Assembly: GCF_006345805.1 (NCBI RefSeq)
Contig: NW_021836834.1
Location: 1-51,395, forward strand
Reading direction: 5' to 3'
From: Octopus sinensis
Lineage: Eukaryota
DNA: 51,395 nucleotides
Below, piece after piece: positions 638 to 50,823 of the stretch; position 1 is the stretch's first letter, and every line of letters starts with the position of its first letter. The notes under the pieces are model-generated. The model did no database searches and was not told where the DNA came from. It saw nothing but the letters and a program-made list of their open reading frames with translations. The translations under genes were made by a program, and so were the position numbers.

Positions 638-823
638 ATCATCATCATCATCATCCTTTAACGTCTGTTTTCCATGCTGACATAGGTTGGACTGTTTGAC
701 CAGAGCTGGCAAGCTGGAGAGCTGCACCAGGTTCCAGTCTGAGTTCGCTGGGTTTCTGTGGGCTGGATGCCCTTCCTAATGCCAACCACTTTACAGTGTG
801 TGCAAAGTGCTTTTAATACGGCA
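638..823 (-). mobile_element. RTE-type 3' tail ending in (ATG)n
   Basis: Reverse complement of the tail at 15960-16138 (gtggttggc.ttaggaagggcatccagc...gacgttaaa(tga)n). Confidence 0.8.
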
Positions 824-6668: not shown

Positions 6669-6706
6669 AATAATAATAATAATAATAATAATAATATAAT
6701 AATAAT

Positions 6707-6974
6707 TGGCCTGCTCACTTAGCCAGTGGGGTGGCGTCATTTGAATGCTAAAACAATACAAAGTGCATTGTGACCAGTGATGTGTAGCAACATCTGATAG
6801 CCTGGTTAGTCACGTGAATAATAATAATAATAATAATATAATAATAATAATAATAATATATAATAATGGCCTGCTCACTTAGCCAGTGGGGTGGCGTCAT
6901 TTGAATGCTAAAACAATACAAAGTGCATTGTGACCAGTGATGTGTAGCAACATCTGATAGCCTGGTTAGTCACG

Positions 6975-6976
<2 letters not shown>
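6707..6976 (+). repeat. Two identical 110 bp units (6707-6816, 6867-6976) separated by (TAA)n
   Basis: tggcctgctcacttagccag...gttagtcacgtg repeated exactly with a 160 bp period. Confidence 0.9.
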
Positions 6977-7022
<46 letters not shown>

Positions 7023-9189: not shown

Positions 9190-9455
9190 TCCTCCGAGTT
9201 TTGTTTTGCAGCGGAGGTGAAATTGCTACGATGGCTTGTTGTGTTGTTGCTGGTGGTGGTGTCGGTGTGGCTGCTGGTCGTTTTCTTTCCCTCCTTCTCC
9301 GGTACAGGAGCACTGGTGGAGGAAAGAGAAGGAAAATCTTCGTTGACGTCAAAAGTGACGCCATCGTTGTCGCTTTTCTTTGGAACGCTCTTTCTTCCGT
9401 CCTTCTCCAGTACTGGAGCACTGGTGGAGGGAAGAGAAGGAAAATCTTCGAGGCC
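9190..9455 (-). other. Antisense coding-like segment fused to the LINE 5' end (possible inverted ORF1 fragment)
   Basis: Open frame EDFPSLPSTSAPVLEK...EDFPSLSSTSAPVPEK with a 108 bp (36-codon) offset repeat. Confidence 0.5.
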
Positions 9456-12400
9456 AGCGGATAAGGACAGCATAGGGTGTCCACAATTCCACCTAGTCGA
9501 CTACACGGACCACAAATTCGTGATCTGTACGGTCGACTTAGATAGGCTACATAGACAAGGACCTGGCTACTGGAAACTGAACGCGTCGTTAACGGCGTGC
9601 AAAGCTTACAGAGACCGGATTAGTTTACTAGTTAAGCGGGTGCTCATGAGGGCAATCATCAACAACAACTGGTGGTTTGCACTCAAGAGAGCAATTAGAG
9701 TAGAGTCGATTAGGTTTAGAAAGGCTCTAGCGATTGAACGTAGGAAGAGAGAGCGGGATTTAGTTAAGAAACTAGACGAGGCTCTTGAGACTGGCATCGC
9801 GACTGACGTGTTGGTGGCAAGGTTGGCCCTCGACCAACACTTTGACACCAAACATGAAGGCTGCGTTGTCAGAGCTAAGGCACGTTCGCTAAGCAGGGAG
9901 GGGACTAGAGCCGCTCGATGGGCCCGCGTAGCGGAGGTGAAGCGAGGCAACAAAGCAACCATTCGGTCTTTGGTGGACCAGAATGGGCGCGAGGTTACCG
10001 AACCGAAGCAGATGTGTGCAGTGTTTCAGCGCGCTTTGCTCAACCGTTTGGGACGAGCGGTGGAACGGACAACGGTACAGACTTTGGTGTGTACTGGACG
10101 GCCTACCGCAACTCTCGGACAGCGAGGCAGAGTGCTGCGAAAGACCGATATCTGCCTGGGAAGTGGAGGAAGCAATGAAGAGTTGCACGAGAGGTAGATC
10201 GCCGGGTTTAGATGGTCTGCCCTACAAGCTTTACACTTCAATGCCAGACTTGTTTGCGGGCCTGTTGGCAAATGTCTACTACAAGTGGCAGCAAAACGGG
10301 AGAATTCCTGCTTTTGTCTGTCGAGGGGTGGTGGCTTTGCTGAGAAAGGACCCAAACAAGGGGTACGTTATAGGGAATTTTCAGCCCATCACTCTGCTCA
10401 ATGCAGAGTTGAAGATTTTGGCCAAGGTGCTAGCCAAGAGATTGGCGCTTGTGGACAAGCTGGTTGGCAAGACGCAGACATGCGCCGTGCCGACCAGGTC
10501 GATACACGACAACCTCCATCTCATGCGCTACATCATAGAGAGGATGGGTAACGACGCTGGCGCGGGTGGGGCTTTAATCAATTTAGATCAGAGTAAAACC
10601 TTCGATAGGGTCGACCAATCGGTACCTGGCAGCTGTTCTCAAGGCAGCCGGCTTCAGTCCAGGCTTCTGCGGGTGGATCGCTGCTTTATACAGCAACATC
10701 TGCTCGGTGATACGGGTGAACGGTCACCTTTCGTAACCGTTTGACATCTCGCATTTGGTCCGCCAAGGATGCCCTCTCTCTTCTTTCTTGTACATATTGA
10801 CTCTCGAGCCATTACTGCGCAAGTTGGAGTCTTTGAGGGGTATCCTGCGCGATCTAGGAGATGAAAACAGCGTGTCTGCCTATGCCGACGACGTCACCGT
10901 GATGGTGTCGGGCCACAGGCATATTGACCTGATTGGCAAGACGCTAAACGAGTACGGAGCAAAGCTTAACACGGAATAGTCTGTGGGCTTGCAACTAGGC
11001 ACCTGGAGAGGCAAGCCCATGCCGTCTAACAGCGTTGTTGGGCGCTGGACAGCCGGACCCGTTAAACTGCTCGGGGTCTGGTTTGGTCCGGACATCCAGG
11101 TGGATAAAAACTGGGAAGAAGTGACGAGCAGGGTGGCACGTCTCACCCAGAAATGGGCCGAGAGTAAGCTGTCTCTGAAAGGTCAAGCAGAGGTGGCAAA
11201 TGCGTACATCGCATCCGTCATCTATTACCGCTTGACCATCGTCCCTTGTCCCGACCGCTGGTTGACCAAGCTGGTACGCCTGCTCTTCGACTTTTTGTGG
11301 AAGGGTCAGGTGCCACTGGTCAGGCAATCCATCTGCTGTCAATGACCGCTGAACGGAGGCCTTGGCATGTCGTGGTTACTGATGCACAAACATGCGCTCA
11401 GGCTGCGACATCTCAAGCATTTCCTAGACGGTGAACAGGTGTGGTCGTCTTTTGTCAGACGCGACTTTCCGCAGCTCATCTCTTTGACAGAGCTGCAGAC
11501 CTGGATCAAACGTAAACCGAGAAAGGGTGCTTGGCACCTCGAGTGCCGTCAAGCTCTTTCCGCCCTCCGCCAGGCAGGCAAAGCGATCGGTTTTAGTTCC
11601 ACTCTAGCGTTCTATAGAGGGTTAGTGGAGGAAAAATGCGACGACGTTCTCGGGGAAACTCTAGGCGTTGATGATAACGAACTGAGCGGTCTGTTTGGAA
11701 GGACTTTCGGACCGGGGCCAATGGATAATTTCCAGAGGTCGCTCGCCTGGCAGTGCTACCGAGGGGCTCTGCCTGTTCAGGATAAACTCTACCGGCACGG
11801 AAGTGCCGTCAGCCGGGCCTGCCCGAGGTGTTGCCAGGACGACGAAACCGTTCTGCACGCACTCGTCCAGTGCCCGAGCATTGCTGAACTATGGGTTTAT
11901 GTCGAACAACTACTGTCGCGTATAGGACGGATCCGGCTATCAGCTGAATCCATAGTGAAGATTGCCCCGCCGACCTCCTTTAACAAGGAGGGCAAGGCCA
12001 TTTTCCTGTGCCTAGTGGCTATGGTGAAAGAGGTTGTATGGTGGACCCGTTTGAAAGGGCTAAAGTCAGACACTTTCTTCTTTGGTCAGGCCTCATCAAC
12101 TTTTTCAGGTTAGAGAGGAGAGTGCTGTCTGATAGCAAGTTTTCTGAAAGGTGGGTGAATTGTGCAAGAATGGCCAGTATAAATGGACCAATTCTCAGGT
12201 TTCGCCTGTAATTGAAAAAGGTGTTATAAAAGGAGAAAGGGGCTCTCTACCCCCCTTTTTGACCAGGCTCCCGTTGGCTTTTATGGGTTTTTCCACCAGG
12301 AACCTTTCGTAACGCCTCCCCCTTTTGGGAGTTTTTCGTTGTTATATTATTTGATTGTTACACTGTTTTTACATGATTTTTTCACAAACGGACAAAACCC

Positions 12401-12477
12401 TTTGTAACCTTTCGTCCTGTTTTGTCCCTTTATGTTTTCTAATCATGTGTGTCAGCCCTTGTGGCCAATAAAAAGAA
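9456..12477 (+). mobile_element. Tx1/L1-clade LINE ORF2 pseudogene (APE C-terminus, RT, CCHC) plus 3' UTR
   Basis: YTDH..GPGYWKLN; SPGLDGLP; FQPITLLNAELK; DQSKTFDRV; VRQGCPLS; YADD (~10882); CPRCCQDDETVLHALVQC; stop at ~12211; aataaaaagaa end then (TTA)n; several frameshifts and stops. Confidence 0.95.
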
Positions 12478-12529
12478 TTTATTATTATTATTATTATTAT
12501 TAATATTATTATTATTAATATTATTATTA

Positions 12530-12758
12530 TGGGGTAGTGAACTTACAGAATCGTTACCACACCACACCACACCACACAAAATGCTCAGCGGCATTTCATC
12601 ACCCATATGTTCTGAGTTCATATGGTCCCGAGGCTAACTTTGCTTTTGGTCCTTTACGGGGTAATGAAATAAGTACCAGTTGAGCACTGGATTTGATGTA
12701 AATGACTAGCTCCCTCACTTGAAATTTCTGGCCTTGTGCTAAAAACTTGAAATCATTA
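12530..12758 (+). mobile_element. SINE family C
   Basis: tRNA-like head, ctgagttca B-box-like site, aaataagtaccagttgagcactgg core, tttctggccttgtgc tail. Confidence 0.75.
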
Positions 12759-12759
12759 T

Positions 12760-12958
<199 letters not shown>

Positions 12959-15900
12959 AAGATAGTTGTGTGCAAAAGTGCTACACCCTAGCAGTTGAGG
13001 GAACCTGTGGAAGAGGTAGACCCAGGAAAACCTGGGACGGGGTGGTGAAGCACGACCTTCGAACTTTAGGTCTCACCAAGGAAATGACTGAAGACCGAGT
13101 CCTATGGAAGTGTGCTGTGCATGAGAGGACCCGGCAGGACTAGTCAGGCCATATCCTGTGGCCCCTACCTGGGACGTAGTCGATCCACCTGTGCATACCT
13201 TCCTTCTTGTGACACTTGTGAAGACCTGCTGAGGCAGTGAAAATCAATCAAAATAGATGAACATCAATGGAATTTGTATCTTTGTGGTACCATGCCAGTG
13301 CCTGTGCACACAGAAAACCATCCGAATGTGGCCGTAGCCAGTACCGCATCGACTGGCCTCCGTGCTGTGGGAACATGGTGGCACATAAAAACACCATCCG
13401 AAGACCCGGCAAGACTAGTCAGGTCATAACCCGTGGGCCCTACCTGGGACGTAGTCAGTCCACCTGTACATACCTTCTTTCTTGTGACACTTGTGAAGAC
13501 CTGTTGAGGCAAGTGAAAAACAATCAAAACAAATCAAAATAGATGAACATCAATGGATTTGTATCTTTGTGGTACCAGTGCCGGTGGCCACAAGAATCCA
13601 TCCGAACGTGGCCGTATCAGTACCACGCTTGTTGGTACCAGTGCCGGTGGCACACAAGAATCCATCCGAACGTGGCCGTAGTCAGTACGCGCATCACTGG
13701 CCATCGTGCTGTGGGCACATAACAAACACCATCCGGTCGTGGCCGTTCGCCAGCCTCATCTAGCACCTGTGTCGGTGGCACATAAAAACACCATCCGAAG
13801 ACCCGGCAGACTAGTCAGGCCATAACCCATGGCCCCTACCTGGGACGTAGTCAGTCCACCTGTGCACACTTCCTCCTTGTGATACTTGTGAAGGCCTGTT
13901 GAGGCAAGTGAAAATCAAAATCAAATCAAAACAAATCAGAATAGATGAACATCAATGGAATTTGTCCTTTGTGGTACCAGTGCCGGTGGCATACAAGAGA
14001 AAACCATCCGAAAGTGGCCGTAGCAGTACCGCATCGACTGGCCTCCGTGCTGTGGGCACATGACAAACACCATCCGATCGTGGCCGTTCGCCAGCCTCAT
14101 CTAGCACCTGTGTCGGTGGCACATAAAAACACCATCCGAAGACCCGGCAAAAGACTAGTCAGGCCATAACCCATGGCCCCTACCTGGGACGTAGTCAGTC
14201 CACCTGTGCATACCTTCCTTCTTGTGACACTTGTGAGGACCTGTTGAGGCAAGTGAAAATCAAATCAAAACAAATCAAAATAGAGAACATCAATGGAATC
14301 TGTATCTTTGTGATACCAGTGCCGGTGGCACACACTTTGTGGTACCAGTGCCGGTGGCACACAAGAGAACCGTCCGAACGTGGCCGTAGCCAGTTCCGCA
14401 TCGACCGGCCTCCGTGCTGTGGGCACGTACAAACACCATCCGATCATGGCCGTTCGCCAGCCTCATCTGGCACCTGTGTCGGTGGCACATAAAAAACACC
14501 TTCCGAAGACCCGGCAAGACTAGTCAGGTCCACCTGTGCATACTTCCTTCTTGTGACGCTTGTGAAGACCTGTTGAGGCAAGTGAAAATCAAATCAAATC
14601 AAAAATATGAACATCAATGGAATTTGTATCTTTGTGGTACCAGTGCCTTGGCACACCGAAATCCAATCCATCCGAACGTGGGTGGCCGTAGTCAGTACCA
14701 CATCGACTGGCCATCGTGCTGTGGGCACATAACAAACACCATCCGATCGTGGCCGTTCGCCAGCCTCATCTAGCACCTTGTCCGGTGGCACATAAAAACA
14801 CCATCCGAAGACGACCCGGCAAGACTAGTCAGGCCATATCCCATGGCCCCTACCTGGGACTAGTCAGTCCACCTGTGCATACTTCCTTCTTGTGACGCTT
14901 GTGAAGACCTGTTGAGGCAAGTGAAAATCAAATCAAATCAAAATAGATGAACATCAATGGAATTTGTATCTTTGTGGTACCAGTGCCTGTGGCACACAAG
15001 AAATCCATCCGAACGTGGCCGTAGTCAGTACCACATCGACTGGCCATCGTGCTGTGGGCACATAACAAACACCATCCGATCGTGGCCGTTCGCCAGCCTC
15101 ATCTAGCACCTGTGTCGGTGGCACATAAAAACACCATCCGAAGACCCGGCAAGACTAGTCAGGCCATATCCCATGGCCCCTACCTGGGACGTAGTCAGTC
15201 CACCTGTGCATACCTCCTCCTTGTGATACTTGTGAAGGCCTGTTGAGGCAAGTGAAAATCAAAATGAAATCAAAACAAATCAAATCAAATCAAATCAAAA
15301 CAAATCAAAATAGATGAACATTAATGGAATTGTATCTTTGTGGTACCAGTGCCGGTGGCATACAAGAAAACCATCCGAACGTGGCCGTAGCCAGTACCGC
15401 ACGACTGGCCTCCGTGCTGTGGGCACGTAACAAACACCATCCGATCGTGGCCGTTCGCCAGCCTCATCTGGCACCTGTGTCGGTGGCACATAAAACACAC
15501 CATCCGAAGACTCGGCAAGACTAGTCAGGCCATAACCTGTGGCCCCTACCTGGGACGTAGTCAGTCCACCTGTGGCATACCTTCCTTCTTGTGACACTTG
15601 TGAAGACCTGTTGAGGCAAGTGAAAATCAAAACAAATCAAAATAGATGAACATCAATGGAATTTGTATCTTTGTGGTACCAGTGCCGGTGGCACGTGGCA
15701 CACAAGAAAACCATCCGAACGTGGCCGTTGCCAGTACCGCATCGACTGGCCTCCGTGCTGTGGGCACGTAACAAACACCATCCGATCGTGGCCGTTGCCA
15801 GCCTCATCTGGCACCTGTGTCGGTGGCACATAAAAACACCATCCGAGCGTGGCCGTCTGCCAGCCTCGTCTGGCACCTGTGTCGGTGGCACATAAAAAAC

Positions 15901-16138
15901 ACCATCCGAGCGTGGCCGTTTGCCAGCCTCGTCTGGCACCTGTGTCGGTGGCACATAAAATCACCCACTACACTCTCGGAGTGGTTGGTGTTAGGAAGGG
16001 CACAGCCAGTAGAAAACACTGCCAGATCTGACTGGACTGGTGCAGCTTTCGGGCTCCCCAGACCCCAGTTGAACCGTCCAACCCATGCTAGCATGGAAAG
16101 CGGACGTTAAATGATGATGATGATGATGATGATGATGA
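12959..16138 (+). mobile_element. 5'-truncated RTE LINE with tandemly expanded 3' UTR
   Basis: 12961-13143 encodes DSCVQKCYTLAVEGTCGRGRPRKTWDGVVKHDLRTLGLTKEMTEDRVLWKCAVHERTRQD*; standard tail at 15960-16110 and (ATG)n to 16138. Confidence 0.9.
13128..15960 (+). repeat. Tandem array of 8 units (275-400 bp) inside the RTE 3' UTR
   Basis: Unit starts gac(c/t)cggc at ~13128, 13403, 13800, 14141, 14508, 14813, 15143, 15509; three ~60 bp subrepeats at 15780-15960. Confidence 0.95.
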
Positions 16139-16329
16139 ATACTTTTATATCAGAGCTACATAAGTTTACCTCCACTCTTTTTTCCGTTTTTTATAAATTT
16201 CTCCAATGGAATTTTTCAGTTTTGTTCTAACATTCTGATAACATTATCAAGACCTAGGAAAAAGAGCATTTAAAAACTGTCAGTGTTTTCTCAAATTAGA
16301 GAATAATTAGCCAATTTTCTCATCCTCTT

Positions 16330-16790
16330 ATTGTCTGCTATTAACAGACCAGCATAGTCAGAGAGCAACCGTATTGGGTCATCTAATCACATCTAAATGG
16401 AGTATTTGCTGAGTGCTAAATTGTGTTGTGTGTCCACAGTTTCAACTTGTTGACTACTCAGGCCAAAAATTTGTGACCTGCATAGCTGACCTAAATAGAG
16501 CGCATAGATAGAGACCTAGATACTGGAAGCCAAACATGGACAGCATTAGTGAATTTCTTTTTATATTTGTTCATTGCTGCAATCATCAACAATTAGTTGT
16601 GAGTGCTCTGAAGTGAGCAATTAGTGCACAGATTATAATGTTTAACAAAGAAGTAACAGTAGAGAAAAATAGATTAGAGAGGGAGTAAATAAATAAATTA
16701 GAAGAGACAATTAGAAAATGCATCATAACTGAAAAAAAGATTTCATTATCAGAGCTAAAGCAAGAGCATTAAGACATGAAAGGGTTTGAT
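16330..16790 (+). mobile_element. Old degraded copy of the Tx1-like LINE (APE C-terminus and linker)
   Basis: From 16431: CPQFQLVDYSGQKFVTCIADLNRAHR*RPRYWKPN aligns to CPQFHLVDYTDHKFVICTVDLDRLHRQGPGYWKLN at 9478. Confidence 0.8.
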
Positions 16791-19576: not shown

Positions 19577-19965
19577 ACATCATCATCATCATCACTGTCA
19601 TCATCGTCATCATCATTGTTTAATGTCCAGTTTCCATACTGGCATGGATTGGACGGTTTGACTGAGGACTGGTAAGCCAGGAGGCTGTACCAGGCTGCAA
19701 TCTGATCTGGCAATGTTTTTACAGCTGGTTGCCCTTCCTAATGCCAACCACTCCGAGAGTGTAGTGGATGCTTTTTATATGCCACTGGCATGAGGGGCAC
19801 TCAGGTGGTACTGGCATCAACCACATTTGAACAGTGCTTTTTATGTGCCAGTCAGGCAGCACTGGCAACGACCATGCTTGAATGGTACATTTTACATGCC
19901 ACCAGCATGGGAGCCAGTCAGGTGGTACTGGCAATGACCATGCTCAAATGGTGCTTCAAATATGC
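19577..19965 (-). mobile_element. RTE-type 3' UTR and tail with ~55-60 bp subrepeats
   Basis: Reverse complement of the tail core plus repeated gccagtaccacctgactggc modules. Confidence 0.8.
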
Positions 19966-32929: not shown

Positions 32930-33242
32930 TGTGTGCCGTACCCGTGGCACGTAAAAGGGCACCATTCGAGCGTGATTGTTACCAATGTCACTTCACTGGC
33001 ACCTGTGCTGGTGGCATGTGTAAAAAGATTCGAGCGAGGTCGTTGCCAGTGCCACCTGACTGGCCCCTATGCCGGTGGCACGTAAAAAGCACCCACTACA
33101 CTCTCGGAGTGGTTGGCATTAGGAAGGGCATCCAGCTGTAGAAACTCTGCCAGATCGAGATTGGAGCCTGGTGCAGCCATCTGGCTCGCCAGCCCTCAGT
33201 CAAAAGCGGTCATTAAACGATGATGATGATAATGATGGTGAT
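32930..33242 (+). mobile_element. RTE-type 3' UTR and tail with hairpin subrepeats
   Basis: gtgcc..tggcacgtaaaa modules, then cacccactacactctcggagtgg core and (ATG)n. Confidence 0.85.
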
Positions 33243-41568: not shown

Positions 41569-42493
41569 ACATCCGATAGATGTGTAATGTCAGTGTACAT
41601 ACTCGACAGAGTGTAAGTACCTTGAGAGAAAAGTTGGACCTAAGAAGCATCAGCTGTGGTGTGCAAGAGAGACGATTGCGCTAGTATGGTCATGTAGCAA
41701 GAATGGTTGAAGATAGGTGTGTGAAAATGTGCCATTCCCTAGCGGTTGAGGGAACCTGTGGAAGAGGTAGACCCAGGAAAACCTGGGACAAGGTGGTGAA
41801 GCACGACCTTCGAACATTAGGCCTCACCAAGGCAATGACTAGTGACCGAGACCTTTGGAAATATGCTGTGTGTGAGAAAACCCGGCAGGACAAGTGAGTC
41901 CATAACCCGTGGCCTTTGTTAGGGATGTGGTCAGCCCACTTATGCATACCTTTCCTTCTCTAGACACAAAACTCTGCTTGCGAAGACCTGTTGAGGCAAG
42001 TGAAATCGAAATTGAATTTGAAATCGAACCACATCTGATGACTGGCACCCATGCCAACCTCCTTTCATTGGACACTTAACTCTGCTTGCGAAAACCTGTT
42101 GGGCAAGTGAAATTGAAATTGAAATTGAACCAAATCCTGTGACTGGCCCTCGGGTGATGCCAGTGCCGCTGGACTGACTCCTGTGCAGGTGGCAAGTAAA
42201 GAAACACCGTTTCAACTCTGTGCTTGAGGAGACCTATTGAGTCAAGTACATCCACATCAAAAATCAATGGAAACTGTAGTTGTGATCCCTGTGCCGGTGG
42301 CATGTAAAAAGCACCCACTACACTCACGGAGTGGTTGGCGTTAGGAAGGGCATCTAGCCGTAGAAACACTGCCAGATCAGACTGGAGCCTGGTGCAGCCT
42401 TCTGGCTTCCCAGACCCCGGTCAAACCGTTCAACCCATGCTAGCATGGAAAACGGACATTAAACGATGATGATGATGATGATGATGATGATGA
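41569..42493 (+). mobile_element. 5'-truncated RTE LINE (sister subfamily) with internally duplicated 3' UTR
   Basis: MCNVSVHTRQSVSTLREKLDL..EGTCGRGRPRKTWDKVVKHDLRTLGLTKAMTSDRDLWK..RQDK*; module repeated at ~41972, 42079, 42216; (ATG)n tail. Confidence 0.92.
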
Positions 42494-42908: not shown

Positions 42909-42949
42909 ATATCCGTCCAACCCATGCTAGCATGAAACGGATGTTAAAC

Positions 42950-42988
<39 letters not shown>

Positions 42989-46019: not shown

Positions 46020-46266
46020 AAGACCCATTAAGCCGAGCAAAATCACAGTTGTGGCAGATACTTCCACATAAATGCACCCCGGTATCACACAAATGTCACC
46101 TGTGCTGGTGGCACATAAAAGCACCCATTACATTCTCGGTGTGATTGGAATTAGGAAGGGCATCAAGCTGTAGAAAACTATGCCAGATCTGACTGAAGCC
46201 TTCCAGCACGCCAGCCCAGTCATACCATCCAGCCCCTGGATAACAGACGTCAAATGATGATGATGA
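46020..46266 (+). mobile_element. RTE-type 3' tail
   Basis: gcacctgtgctggtggcacataaaa module, tail core, (ATG)n. Confidence 0.8.
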
Positions 46267-46420
46267 TGTGTCTATGTCTCTGTGTCCATGTTTGTCCACC
46301 ACTACCACCACCACTTGACAACTGGTGCTGGTGTATTTACATCCCAGTAACTGAGCACTTCGGCAAAAGAGATCAATACAATAAGTACTAGGTTTTAAAA
46401 TAAAGTACTGAGGTTAATTT

Positions 46421-48444: not shown

Positions 48445-48535
48445 TCTGGTTCGCCAGTCCTCAGTCAAACCGTCCAACCCATGCCAGCATGGAAACCAGA
48501 CATTAAACAATGATGATGATGATGATGTAGGATGA
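48445..48535 (+). mobile_element. Short RTE-type 3' tail
   Basis: gtcaaaccgtccaacccatgccagcatggaaa..attaaac(atg)n. Confidence 0.8.
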
Positions 48536-48536
48536 A

Positions 48537-49535
48537 TTCCAGAACTTTTGAGATTTTTTCAGAAGAGATGTTTGTTAATTTCAAATGTATACAAAACTCT
48601 AATCACCTTCAAAGTAAAGGTATCCAGCCTTTGTCACAGCTTCCTTCATCTTCTCAATGTCTTCAAACTGACTGTGCCTGAGATTCTCCCCTGTAGGCAG
48701 GTTGAAGGACAGAGTTTTGATGCCCATCTCTGTCACGTAGTTGGTTACCAAGAATGGAAATGTAGACTGGCACAAATGCTCCGACCTTTTGCAATCCTGA
48801 ACTCCCTCAAAACTTTCACTAAGTACTCTCTGTTGACCATCTGACCAAAGGTAATCCAGTGGTAGTAGATGATACCCTTGCTGTCAAAAAGGGGCTCATT
48901 ATGAGCTTCCCAGTGTACTTGCTTATCTGGCCTCTTGTGTCAGCAAAATGACAAATCCTGGGCTCACGCAGGTTAATCCATAAGCAGCCTGGAGTATTTC
49001 AGTAAGTTTTCTGTTATGTTTTTTGCTTAGTTTAACACAAGACTTTAATGCATAGCTAGCTTCCAAATTGTCCTCATACGCTGATTACATTCTTACTTCT
49101 TTATTGCCCACAAGGGGCTAAACATAGAGGAGACAAACAAGGACGGACAAAGGGGTTAAGTCGATTACATCGACCCCAGTGTGTACTAGTACTTAATTTA
49201 TCGACTCTGAAAGGATGAAAGGCAAAGCCGACCTCGGCGAAATTTGAACTCAGAACGTAGCGGCAAATGAAATAAGCATTTCACCTGGCATGCTAACGTT
49301 TCTGCCAGCCCACTGCCTTTCACCCTGATTACATTCTGCCAAACTTGTCAGCTGCAACAAGCAATGTTTAGTAGGATGTGTTCAAATTGCTGTTACAACT
49401 GTTTCCTTCATTCTGGAATAATAAAAGTCACTAATTAGACGCATAGTTTTGGTTTATTAAAATTACAATAATCTATAATATAGAATAGTTATAACTGCTT
49501 CTAAAAACTTTTTAAAACTTCTGGAATGCACTTTG
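48537..49535 (-). mobile_element. Mariner-like remnant with decayed TIRs
   Basis: Minus: DSKGIIYYHWITFGQMVNREYLVKVLREF; LVTNYVTEMGIK; TIRs tgaattccagaactttt vs reverse complement tgcattccagaagtttt. Confidence 0.75.
49094..49317 (-). mobile_element. SINE family A nested in the mariner remnant
   Basis: 13 bp TSD ctgattacattct at 49081-49093 and 49325-49337. Confidence 0.92.
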
Positions 49536-49845: not shown

Positions 49846-50823
49846 TGAGATGGTATCAAAAAGTTCCTGGTTTAGGTTTGTAGCACACCAACAAATTGCA
49901 GCATATGGTTGTGTGTGCAGTGAGAGTTAGCAGTAACTTTCCTGAGGCAGTGTGCCTAGCGACATCACTGTGTTTACTTTGCAAGTTCTGAAATTCATGT
50001 TTTTGTGATCACATGTATGCTGTAGTCTGTGAATTTTGTCATGGACAGAACAAAGACCCACGTGAAATTTTGCATTAAACTCAGCGTCTACCACACAGAC
50101 TTTGAGCATGCTCAGCAACAAAGCAATGGGTTGTACGCGCATATTTTGATGACTGGGTGCTTCAAAAGCAGAACATCTCTGGAAGACAATGAACAATCTG
50201 GAAGACCTGTCATGAACATCACACCTGGAAATGTGGTGAAAGTTCATCAACTTGTGCATGAGGATCGTTGGAGGACAATCAACAACATTATTGATGCCAA
50301 TCTTAATGTCTAAATCTATATAGCCAATCTTAACATCTACATTCTTCATGACAACGATGCCCCCTGTTACTGAGGTCTCCTTACTCATGAGTTTCTCACC
50401 AAAAACATGATATTGCTTCCATTCCACACTCACCCTATTCACCCAGTTTAGCACATGTGGACTTACATTTCTTCCTCAAGATGAAAATGTAATGCAAAGG
50501 TTGCTGTTTTAACACCATTGTCAAGATCAAGAGTGAATTGCAGATGGTCTTCTACTCACTTACAATGTGACTATTTTGAAGGAGATGATGTTAAAACTTA
50601 GGTAAATAGGTTAAAAGTTTGGTAAATTACTTTCTGTGCTGAGATACATCCTCTCTCCTCCATGGCCTTGATCGTGTAATGGTGTCTTTCCACAATCCCA
50701 TTTCTGCTCAGCTTGTATGCCACTCTGAAGAAGCAGAGTACATTCCACTTACCGAGCATCTCCTTCAGCATAACTTAGGTAAATAGGTTATAACTAGCCT
50801 TGGAACATTTTGATGCCACCTCC
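49846..50823 (+). mobile_element. Internally deleted mariner element with TIRs
   Basis: HVKFCIKL; FKSRTSLEDNEQSGRP..VHEDRWRTI; HDNDAP; TIR gagatggtatcaaaaagttcc / ggaacattttgatgccacctc. Confidence 0.85.
50614..50771 (-). mobile_element. 158 bp LTR-retrotransposon integrase (rve) fragment flanked by a 19 bp direct repeat
   Basis: MLKEMLGKWNVLCFFRVAYKLSRNGIVERHHYTIKAMEERG (NGxVER motif); aacttaggtaaataggtta at 50595-50613 and 50772-50790. Confidence 0.75.

What the first reader, a model, noticed from the sequence alone, without database searches (positions are those of the whole stretch)
13128..15960. A satellite forming inside a LINE: RTE stop codon and 3' UTR amplified 8 times with higher-order structure
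Seen: between the RTE ORF end and its normal tail lie 8 units of 275-400 bp. Each begins with the last codons and stop (gacccggcaagactag), joined to the previous unit through a gaa microhomology, and contains a variable (AAATC/AAAAC)n tract. Diagnostic variants recur: ccttgtgatacttgtgaaggcc occurs in units 3 and 7 only, each preceded by a gtcagtac..ctggccatcgtgc-type unit (2 and 6), suggesting a ~1.35-1.4 kb four-unit duplication. Unit 5 has a deletion between two tagtcag repeats. Inference: stepwise tandem amplification turned a retrotransposon UTR into a nascent higher-order repeat, either after insertion or in the source element, which would then be a mobile satellite.
Basis: partly seen in the sequence, partly recalled or inferred. 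Interest (0 to 1): 0.75.

Follow-up and report, generated by a model that had tools for sequence, protein, structure and literature searches.

The report
Tandemly amplified LINE tail in octopus
A dead, 5'-truncated copy of an octopus LINE retrotransposon has had about 350 bp of its 3' end (the last codons, the stop codon and most of the untranslated region) copied head-to-tail eight times; this is a real but ordinary transposon-derived tandem array, not yet shown to be a satellite or to be mobile.

Summary
Window 13128-15846 carries eight head-to-tail units of 275-396 bp. Each starts with the last 12 nt of a LINE reading frame plus TAG. The seven junctions are all versions of one sequence (CCGA|AGACCCGG). 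Unit 8 runs colinearly into the normal 63-bp sub-repeats, the conserved tail and (ATG)9.

A close relative from elsewhere (L002) and three more distant copies each carry this segment only once. The array is therefore a derived state.

The most likely history is one founding duplication at a 2-3 nt microhomology, followed by rounds of in-register unequal exchange or conversion. The units are mosaics.
- Units 3 and 7 pair (bootstrap 81-94%).
- Units 5 and 6 are the most recent pair.
- Unit 2 groups with units 5 and 6.
- Units 4 and 8 share only ancestral states.

The proposed four-unit higher-order repeat is thus only partly supported.

I could not decide whether amplification happened at this locus or in a source element, because no octopus genome could be searched. 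I favour this locus (0.5) over a source element (0.3). LINE-derived tandem arrays are already known, for example chicken CR1 to HinfI and L1 to the cetacean satellite. This is a new member of a known kind, of modest interest.

The parts
12958..13142 (+). Remnant of the LINE ORF C-terminus (61 codons plus TAG at 13140-13142). The element is 5'-truncated here, directly after a (CTA)n(TAA)n microsatellite.
   Evidence: Open frame. It is 72% identical to P0001 (Octopus vulgaris hypothetical protein) and similar to P0002. Distant relatives with the same C-terminus carry RVT_1 upstream.
13128..13402 (+). Unit 1 (275 bp). It is contiguous with the ORF, lacks sub-repeat 2, and is among the most diverged units.
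13403..13798 (+). Unit 2 (396 bp). It carries an extra copy of about 63 bp of sub-repeat 1, and its sub-repeat 1 is of the type shared with units 5 and 6.
13799..14142 (+). Unit 3 (344 bp). It shares 4-5 derived sites with unit 7 in its 5' half.
14143..14507 (+). Unit 4 (365 bp). It contains a 29-bp internal tandem duplication at 14306-14363.
14508..14812 (+). Unit 5 (305 bp). It has a 35-bp deletion between TAGTCAG direct repeats and several small slippage-type indels. It is the recent sister of unit 6.
14813..15142 (+). Unit 6 (330 bp). It has no private substitutions.
15143..15508 (+). Unit 7 (366 bp). It is the partner of unit 3 and has the longest (AAATC)n tract (15256-15309).
15509..15846 (+). 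Unit 8 (338 bp to the equivalent end point). It is the unit closest to the single-unit relative L002 and is almost unchanged from the inferred ancestral unit.
15847..15946 (+). Rest of sub-repeat 3 plus sub-repeat 4 (63-bp sub-repeats). This stretch is not part of the large unit and is colinear with L002.
15947..16110 (+). Conserved 3' tail, shared with SINE-like and LINE copies elsewhere in the window and in Octopus vulgaris.
16111..16138 (+). Terminal (ATG)9 microsatellite, the end of the element.
41600..42490 (+). Comparison copy in the same window: a related LINE 3' end with a single stop-codon region, its own triplicated UTR module, the tail and (ATG)n.

Best explanation
This is non-coding debris of a 5'-truncated octopus LINE copy in which one 3' segment became a tandem array.

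The segment is about 355 bp: the last 12-14 nt of the ORF, the stop codon, the first part of the 3' UTR with its (AAATC)n tract, sub-repeats 1 and 2, and the first 25 nt of sub-repeat 3.

Step 1 (inferred from the single junction type). One founding duplication joined sub-repeat 3 (..CACCATCCGA) to the ORF end (AGACCCGGCAAGACTAG) at a 2-3 nt microhomology.

Step 2 (shown by shared derived sites and mosaic units). The two-unit array grew to eight units by repeated in-register unequal exchange, slippage or conversion. This included a recent 5/6 duplication and an event that copied the junction-spanning block of units 2-3 to units 6-7.

Step 3 (shown). Small slippage events followed: a 35-bp deletion in unit 5, 63-bp and 29-bp internal duplications in units 2 and 4, loss of sub-repeat 2 in unit 1, and microsatellite length changes.

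The array most probably grew at this locus after insertion, and it has no function.
For: Anatomy and junctions.
- Eight units with one junction type.
- Unit 8 is colinear with the normal 3' end.
- The close relative L002 has the same ORF end, one unit, four sub-repeats and the tail. Its divergence from the window copy is 4.2% for the tail, 5.6% for unit 8 and 11.6% for the ORF end.
- Three further relatives have a single stop region.

Stepwise, recombining growth rather than one burst.
- Clades 3+7 (81-94%), 5+6 (80%) and 2+5+6 (77%).
- Incompatible site patterns: {3,5,6,7} for a 1-bp deletion at column 60 versus {2,5,6} for four sites in sub-repeat 1.
- Exact runs of 97 and 77 nt between units 5 and 6.

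Compatibility with growth at this locus.
- Private change in the copy's unique parts is 9/184 in the ORF end and about 9/265 in the tail. This is similar to the derived change per unit, mostly 3-6%.
Against: - Unit 8 has only 2 derived substitutions in 301 sites, against 8-18 in units 1-4, 6 and 7 (unit 5's 27 is inflated by misalignment). Units sitting neutrally in one dead locus for the same time should not differ this much.
- Some unit pairs differ by 9-12%. That is near or above twice the tail's 4.2% distance to L002.
- A sister subfamily shows that duplicated UTR modules can be inherited through retrotransposition.
- The sample of related copies is tiny: four relatives, only one of them close.
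- No genome-wide search for the junction could be made.
Confidence: 0.5

Rival explanations
1. The array formed and grew in an active source element and was retrotransposed as a block. That would be a LINE sub-lineage with an internal variable-number tandem repeat. This copy would be one 5'-truncated daughter. Only the last unit, which adjoins the tail the reverse transcriptase must recognise, was kept by selection.
For: - Unit 8 is almost unchanged (2/301 derived) while the upstream units carry more. The derived fraction falls roughly from 5' to 3': 4.9, 6.0, 4.0, 3.3, 9.9 (inflated), 3.7, 2.7 and 0.7%.
- Distance to L002 falls from the ORF end (11.6%) through unit 1 (9.8%) to unit 8 (5.6%) and the tail (4.2%).
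- UTR module duplications are shared between independent copies of a sister subfamily.
- Some unit pairs are more diverged than the tail is from L002.
Against: - All four related copies that include the stop region have a single unit, among them the close relative L002.
- No protein-database entry resembles the junction-crossing frames.
- The gradient rests on small counts. It could also reflect mutagenic duplication events or a more strongly conserved tail.
Confidence: 0.3
2. All units were made in one retrotransposition event. The reverse transcriptase repeatedly jumped back from about 12 nt inside the ORF to sub-repeat 3 of the same or another RNA template.
For: - All seven junctions are identical with a short microhomology.
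- An independent related copy in O. vulgaris has a 30-bp duplication across the stop codon. Its left edge lies within 3 nt of the same ORF position, which hints at a recurrent switch point.
Against: - Units made from one template would be identical at birth and give a star tree. The observed nested groups (3+7, 5+6, 2+5+6), the mosaic sites and the 3-12% divergence require later duplication and conversion anyway.
- Seven independent jumps landing in sub-repeat 3, and never in the similar sub-repeats 1, 2 or 4, are unlikely.
Confidence: 0.07
3. The founding dimer came from a second, 5'-truncated copy inserting into the 3' region of a resident copy (the double-insertion route to tandem transposon dimers), and then expanded.
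For: The unit start looks like a 5'-truncation point. The model is established for other transposons (own knowledge: McGurk and Barbash 2018).
Against: The displaced remainder of the resident copy (rest of sub-repeat 3, sub-repeat 4, tail and (ATG)n) should lie downstream of the new tail. The sequence after 16138 is unrelated. The units also lack a tail and (ATG)n between them.
Confidence: 0.05
4. The array, or its unit number, is an assembly artefact.
For: Tandem repeats are error-prone in assemblies, and no reads were available to check.
Against: The units differ by 3-12%, with unit-specific indels and a phylogenetic structure. Artefactual duplication gives identical copies.
Confidence: 0.04

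Closest known systems
Chicken HinfI (SCR1) satellite derived from the CR1 LINE, as tabulated in the review PMC9659126
   Same: The monomer consists of the LINE 3' UTR plus a piece of the adjoining ORF2 coding region, amplified head-to-tail.
   Different: The chicken repeat is an established satellite with long arrays outside the element. Here there are 8 units at one locus, still embedded between the ORF end and the tail of one copy.
Common cetacean satellite from the L1 3' end, and PisTR-A satellite from the hypervariable 3' UTR of Ogre LTR retrotransposons (PMC9659126, citing Macas et al. 2009)
   Same: A retroelement 3' UTR that is modular and prone to internal tandem duplication serves as the seed of tandem arrays. 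The octopus family likewise shows variable numbers of 63-bp sub-repeats and duplicated UTR modules.
   Different: In Ogre the short arrays are carried by many mobile copies, and one expanded into a genomic satellite. Neither has been shown here.
Retroelements with an internal variable-number tandem repeat (human SVA VNTR, mouse L1 5' monomers) - own knowledge
   Same: It would be the same kind of thing if the array is source-borne: a tandem array that travels with the element and changes copy number.
   Different: Those arrays are present in essentially all copies of the family. Here the only close relative, and three further relatives, have one unit.
Transposon-derived minisatellites inside dead copies (human survey by Ahmed and Liang 2012, cited in PMC9659126)
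   Same: A local tandem duplication of part of an inactive transposon copy that expands by unequal exchange and has no function.
   Different: The unit here is long (about 350 bp) and itself contains shorter repeats, so the array is nested: 5-bp, 63-bp and 350-bp periods.

Membership tests
RTE-clade LINE (non-LTR retrotransposon) | A single ORF encoding an apurinic-type endonuclease and a reverse transcriptase that places in the RTE clade | not testable with these tools
   Only 61 C-terminal codons remain in this copy. No full-length close relative could be retrieved.
RTE-clade LINE (non-LTR retrotransposon) | The ORF end is homologous to the C-terminus of reverse-transcriptase-bearing LINE ORFs | tested here: met
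   72% identity to P0001 (Octopus vulgaris) and similar to P0002. The distant relative L004 has RVT_1, plus a PHD-type finger, just upstream of the homologous C-terminus. This shows a LINE, not specifically RTE.
RTE-clade LINE (non-LTR retrotransposon) | The 3' end has no poly(A) and ends in a short tandem repeat | tested here: met
   The element ends in (ATG)9 at 16111-16138. Relatives end in (ATG)n or (GAT)n. CR1 and L2-type LINEs share this trait, so it is not diagnostic (own knowledge).
Satellite DNA with higher-order repeat structure | Head-to-tail tandem units | tested here: met
Satellite DNA with higher-order repeat structure | Long arrays (tens to thousands of units), usually at several loci | tested here: not met
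   There are 8 units (2.7 kb) at this locus. There is no other junction in the 51-kb window or in 20 kb of O. vulgaris. The rest of the genome could not be searched.
Satellite DNA with higher-order repeat structure | Units one higher-order period apart are more alike than neighbouring units, across the whole period | tested here: inconclusive
   Excluding unit 1, the mean distance at lag 4 is 4.3%, against 6.7-8.6% at lags 1-3. The 3/7 pair is supported. However, there is no 4/8 clade, unit 6 is nearest to unit 5, and three-unit block identity at lag 4 (96.5%) lies within the range of other registers. Only one junction-spanning block (units 2-3 versus 6-7) stands out.
Transposon-derived tandem repeat | The monomer is homologous to an internal part of a transposon, and the canonical element carries it once | tested here: met
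   L002 shows ORF end, one unit, tail. The window copy at 41600-42490 and two L001 copies also carry it once.
Retroelement carrying a mobile internal tandem array (SVA-like) | The same array junction is present in independent insertions with different flanks | tested here: inconclusive
   0 of 4 related copies carry it. Junction-frame protein search found none. Junction DNA scans found none, but genome contigs and viral contigs hold no octopus DNA at all (control motif), and no control could be run on metagenome contigs.

The most novel reading that the evidence does not exclude
The founding duplication, and perhaps later ones, were made by the element's own reverse transcriptase at a recurrent template-switch point 12-14 nt upstream of the stop codon. 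The resulting array is carried by an active LINE sub-lineage in which only the terminal unit next to the tail is kept by selection. That would make it a LINE with a mobile internal variable-number repeat that seeds tandem arrays around the octopus genome.
Probability: 0.2. Interest if true: 0.55.

Novelty: new member of a known kind. Interest (0 to 1): 0.3.

Why it matters
If the array is local, it is one more snapshot of how a transposon fragment starts to behave as a tandem repeat. It is useful as a well-resolved example, with a founding junction, nested periods of 5, 63 and 350 bp, and mosaic units. It does not change any current view.

If the same junction turns up at many loci, octopus would have a LINE that carries and spreads a variable tandem array. 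That would bear on how the very repeat-rich cephalopod genomes generate dispersed tandem repeats. It would also give a natural system for studying template switching by a LINE reverse transcriptase near the stop codon.

Tried and rejected
- Protein search with an alignment of five junction-crossing frames: 109 word-sharing candidates, none significant.
- Exact look-up of ten window ORFs to locate the source record and orthologous loci: none is in the collection.
- Junction DNA scans of metagenome, prokaryotic-genome and viral contigs: 0 hits each. A control motif from the common tail also gave 0 hits in the last two, so these negatives carry no weight.
- Relatives from JGI metagenomes (L004-L011) are only 31-49% identical, come from other hosts, and show no large 3' arrays. 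They were useful only to show RVT_1 upstream of the homologous C-terminus.
- RNA folding of unit 8 plus the tail: no more stable than shuffles, z = -0.26.
- Rfam: no family at 12000-16600.
- Target-site duplication: none convincing. The 12-nt match AATGATGATGAT is microsatellite on both sides.
- The nested or double-insertion origin is rejected because no second tail lies downstream.
- A clock test (private changes in the unique ORF end and tail versus derived changes per unit) did not separate growth at this locus from growth in a source element.

Full report
**What is there**

The motif ACTAGTCAGG occurs exactly eight times in the 51-kb window, all between 13139 and 15520. Cutting there gives head-to-tail units of 275, 396, 344, 365, 305, 330, 366 and 338 bp. 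TRF independently reports periods of 333 and 366 bp in the same stretch, and a 63-bp period at 15695-15960.

Upstream, a 61-codon open frame runs from 12958 to the TAG at 13140-13142. Its peptide is 72% identical to a hypothetical protein of Octopus vulgaris (P0001). It is similar to P0002 from an ENA metagenome contig. Distant relatives with the same C-terminus carry an RVT_1 domain just upstream.

So this is the C-terminal remnant of a LINE ORF, 5'-truncated right after a (CTA)n(TAA)n microsatellite. The RTE label cannot be checked from this remnant. The window is evidently octopus-like DNA. This is an inference from P0001 and from the many shared tail copies.

**Anatomy of the unit**

Contig L002 (ENA ERZ22665968, 1569 bp) is a close relative that shows the normal structure. 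It reads, in order:
- the ORF end, ...GAGAAGACCCGGCAAGACTAG;
- one UTR segment with an (AAATC)n-like tract;
- four 63-bp sub-repeats;
- the conserved tail;
- (ATG)n and unrelated flank.

The window's unit 8 plus 15847-16138 is colinear with this, including exactly four sub-repeats.

Units 1-7 each stop 25 nt into sub-repeat 3 (..CACCATCCGA) and restart at AGACCCGGCAAGACTAG. All seven junctions are small variants of that one sequence: a 1-nt deletion, +AA, +GAC and a C>T change. The overlap between donor and acceptor is GA, or GAA at most.

Three more distant copies also have a single stop region: window 41600-42490, L001 10015-10620 and L001 5700-6304. The array is therefore a derived state of a family that normally has one unit.

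**Relations among the units**

Pairwise distances range from 3.1% (units 3 and 7) to about 12%. Neighbour-joining trees rooted on L002 give these bootstrap values:

| Clade | Bootstrap |
|---|---|
| 3+7 | 81% (94% in the 5' half) |
| 5+6 | 80% |
| 2+5+6 | 77% |
| 3+4+7 | 67% |

Unit 8 is basal. No 4+8 clade appears.

Derived substitutions shared by subsets of units are four for {3,7}, four for {2,5,6} and three for {5,6}. Units 4 and 8 share only ancestral states. A 1-bp deletion shared by {3,5,6,7} is incompatible with the {2,5,6} sites, so the units are mosaics. That is what in-register unequal exchange or conversion produces.

The longest exact runs are between units 5 and 6, at 97 and 77 nt.

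Evidence bearing on a four-unit period:
- Excluding unit 1, the mean distance at lag 4 is 4.3%, against 6.7-8.6% at lags 1-3.
- The block spanning the end of unit 2 and the start of unit 3 is closest to the block spanning units 6-7, with 5 mismatches. That ties with the block spanning units 5-6 versus the one spanning units 6-7.
- The next block (units 3-4 versus 7-8) does not stand out.
- Three-unit blocks at lag 4 (96.5%) fall within the range of other registers (93.9-97.0%).

I conclude that one junction-spanning block was copied about 1344 bp downstream. A clean higher-order repeat is not present.

**Later small events**
- A 35-bp deletion between TAGTCAG repeats in unit 5.
- An extra copy of about 63 bp of sub-repeat 1 in unit 2.
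- A 29-bp duplication in unit 4.
- Loss of sub-repeat 2 in unit 1.
- Length changes in the (AAATC)n tract.

**Where did the array grow?**

I could not search any octopus genome. The available DNA collections hold no octopus sequence: a control motif from the common tail gave 0 hits. The negative junction scans therefore say nothing.

Indirect evidence is mixed.

For growth at this locus:
- Every related copy seen has one unit.
- The copy's unique parts carry private change (9/184 in the ORF end; about 9/265 in the sub-repeat 3 to tail region). This is of the same order as the derived change per unit, mostly 3-6%.

For growth in a source element:
- Unit 8 has only 2 derived substitutions in 301 sites, against 8-18 in units 1-4, 6 and 7 (unit 5's count of 27 is inflated by local misalignment). 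Neutral decay in one dead locus does not predict this. Selection on the terminal, functional UTR of an active element would.
- Distance to L002 falls from the ORF end (11.6%) to the tail (4.2%).
- In a sister subfamily, a duplicated UTR module is shared by independent copies.

Mutagenic duplication events, or generally stronger conservation of the tail among source lineages, could also explain these gradients. I put local growth at 0.5 and a source-borne array at 0.3.

A single-event origin by serial template switching does not fit the nested unit tree. A double-insertion origin lacks the expected second tail. An assembly artefact is unlikely, given the diverged, structured units.

**Comparison with what is known**

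Tandem arrays seeded by retroelement 3' regions are well documented in the review PMC9659126:
- the chicken HinfI repeat, from the CR1 3' UTR plus partial ORF2;
- the common cetacean satellite, from the L1 3' end;
- PisTR-A, from the hypervariable Ogre 3' UTR.

Octopus vulgaris is reported to have abundant LINEs and SINEs, including RTE families (PMC13282606). Using that paper's calibration (Jukes-Cantor distance 0.065 at about 18 My), the youngest unit pairs, at about 3% pairwise, would be a few million years old. This is only a rough figure.

The present locus is a new member of this known kind. Its small points of interest are three:
- the inclusion of the stop codon in the unit;
- the nested 5, 63 and 350-bp periodicity;
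- a possible recurrent breakpoint 12-14 nt upstream of the stop, which is also seen as a 30-bp duplication in an O. vulgaris copy.

**Checks that added nothing**

RNA folding and Rfam were uninformative.

Noticed in passing
L001:5706-5752: At the 5' end of a 5'-truncated related LINE copy in Octopus vulgaris, 'agtgaggccataacctt' and 'agtgagaccataacctt' lie 30 bp apart. This is a small tandem duplication spanning the stop codon. Its left edge (ctcggcaag) falls within 3 nt of the ORF position where the window's array units begin. It may mark a recurrent breakpoint.
   Followed up: partly
window 41960-42260: The second related LINE 3' end has three diverged copies of the UTR module 'cttgcgaagacctgttgaggcaagtgaaat..' (near 41965, 42075 and 42215). 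The last module plus the tail is shared at 88-93% with L001:4020-4494, so such UTR duplications are inherited in that subfamily.
   Followed up: partly
window 15509-15846: Unit 8 carries 2 derived substitutions in 301 sites, while units 1-4, 6 and 7 carry 8-18 (unit 5's 27 is inflated by misalignment). This departs from clock-like decay within one array and remains unexplained.
   Followed up: partly
window 9217-12113 (+): A decayed, frameshifted LINE of another family (RVT_1 and zf-RVT hits) lies about 1 kb upstream of the array.
   Followed up: partly
window 12600-12957: A SINE-like sequence is followed by a 190-bp compound microsatellite, (CTA)n(TAA)n with an embedded (TGA)3. The truncated LINE copy starts directly after it.
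   Followed up: no
window 638-790(-), 19589-19956(-), 32938-33242(+), 42913-42975(+), 46094-46268(+), 48445-48537(+): These are tail-only or sub-repeat-plus-tail copies sharing the LINE's conserved 3' end and (ATG)n. They are SINE-like partners or strongly truncated copies, with 2-3 of the 63-bp sub-repeats.
   Followed up: no
window 6669-7019: A 160-bp period repeat, 2.2 copies at 97% identity, each copy bounded by (AAT)n.
   Followed up: no
window 49927-50454: Overlapping ORFs lie on both strands. The + strand frame has a Mariner-like N-terminal look (..SGRP..), probably a transposase remnant. This is judged by eye only.
   Followed up: no
window 13128-15960 versus the whole window: The array is GC-rich (51%) with CpG observed/expected 0.71, against 38% and 0.47 for the whole window. 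Several of the variable sites are CpG to TpG or CpA changes.
   Followed up: no
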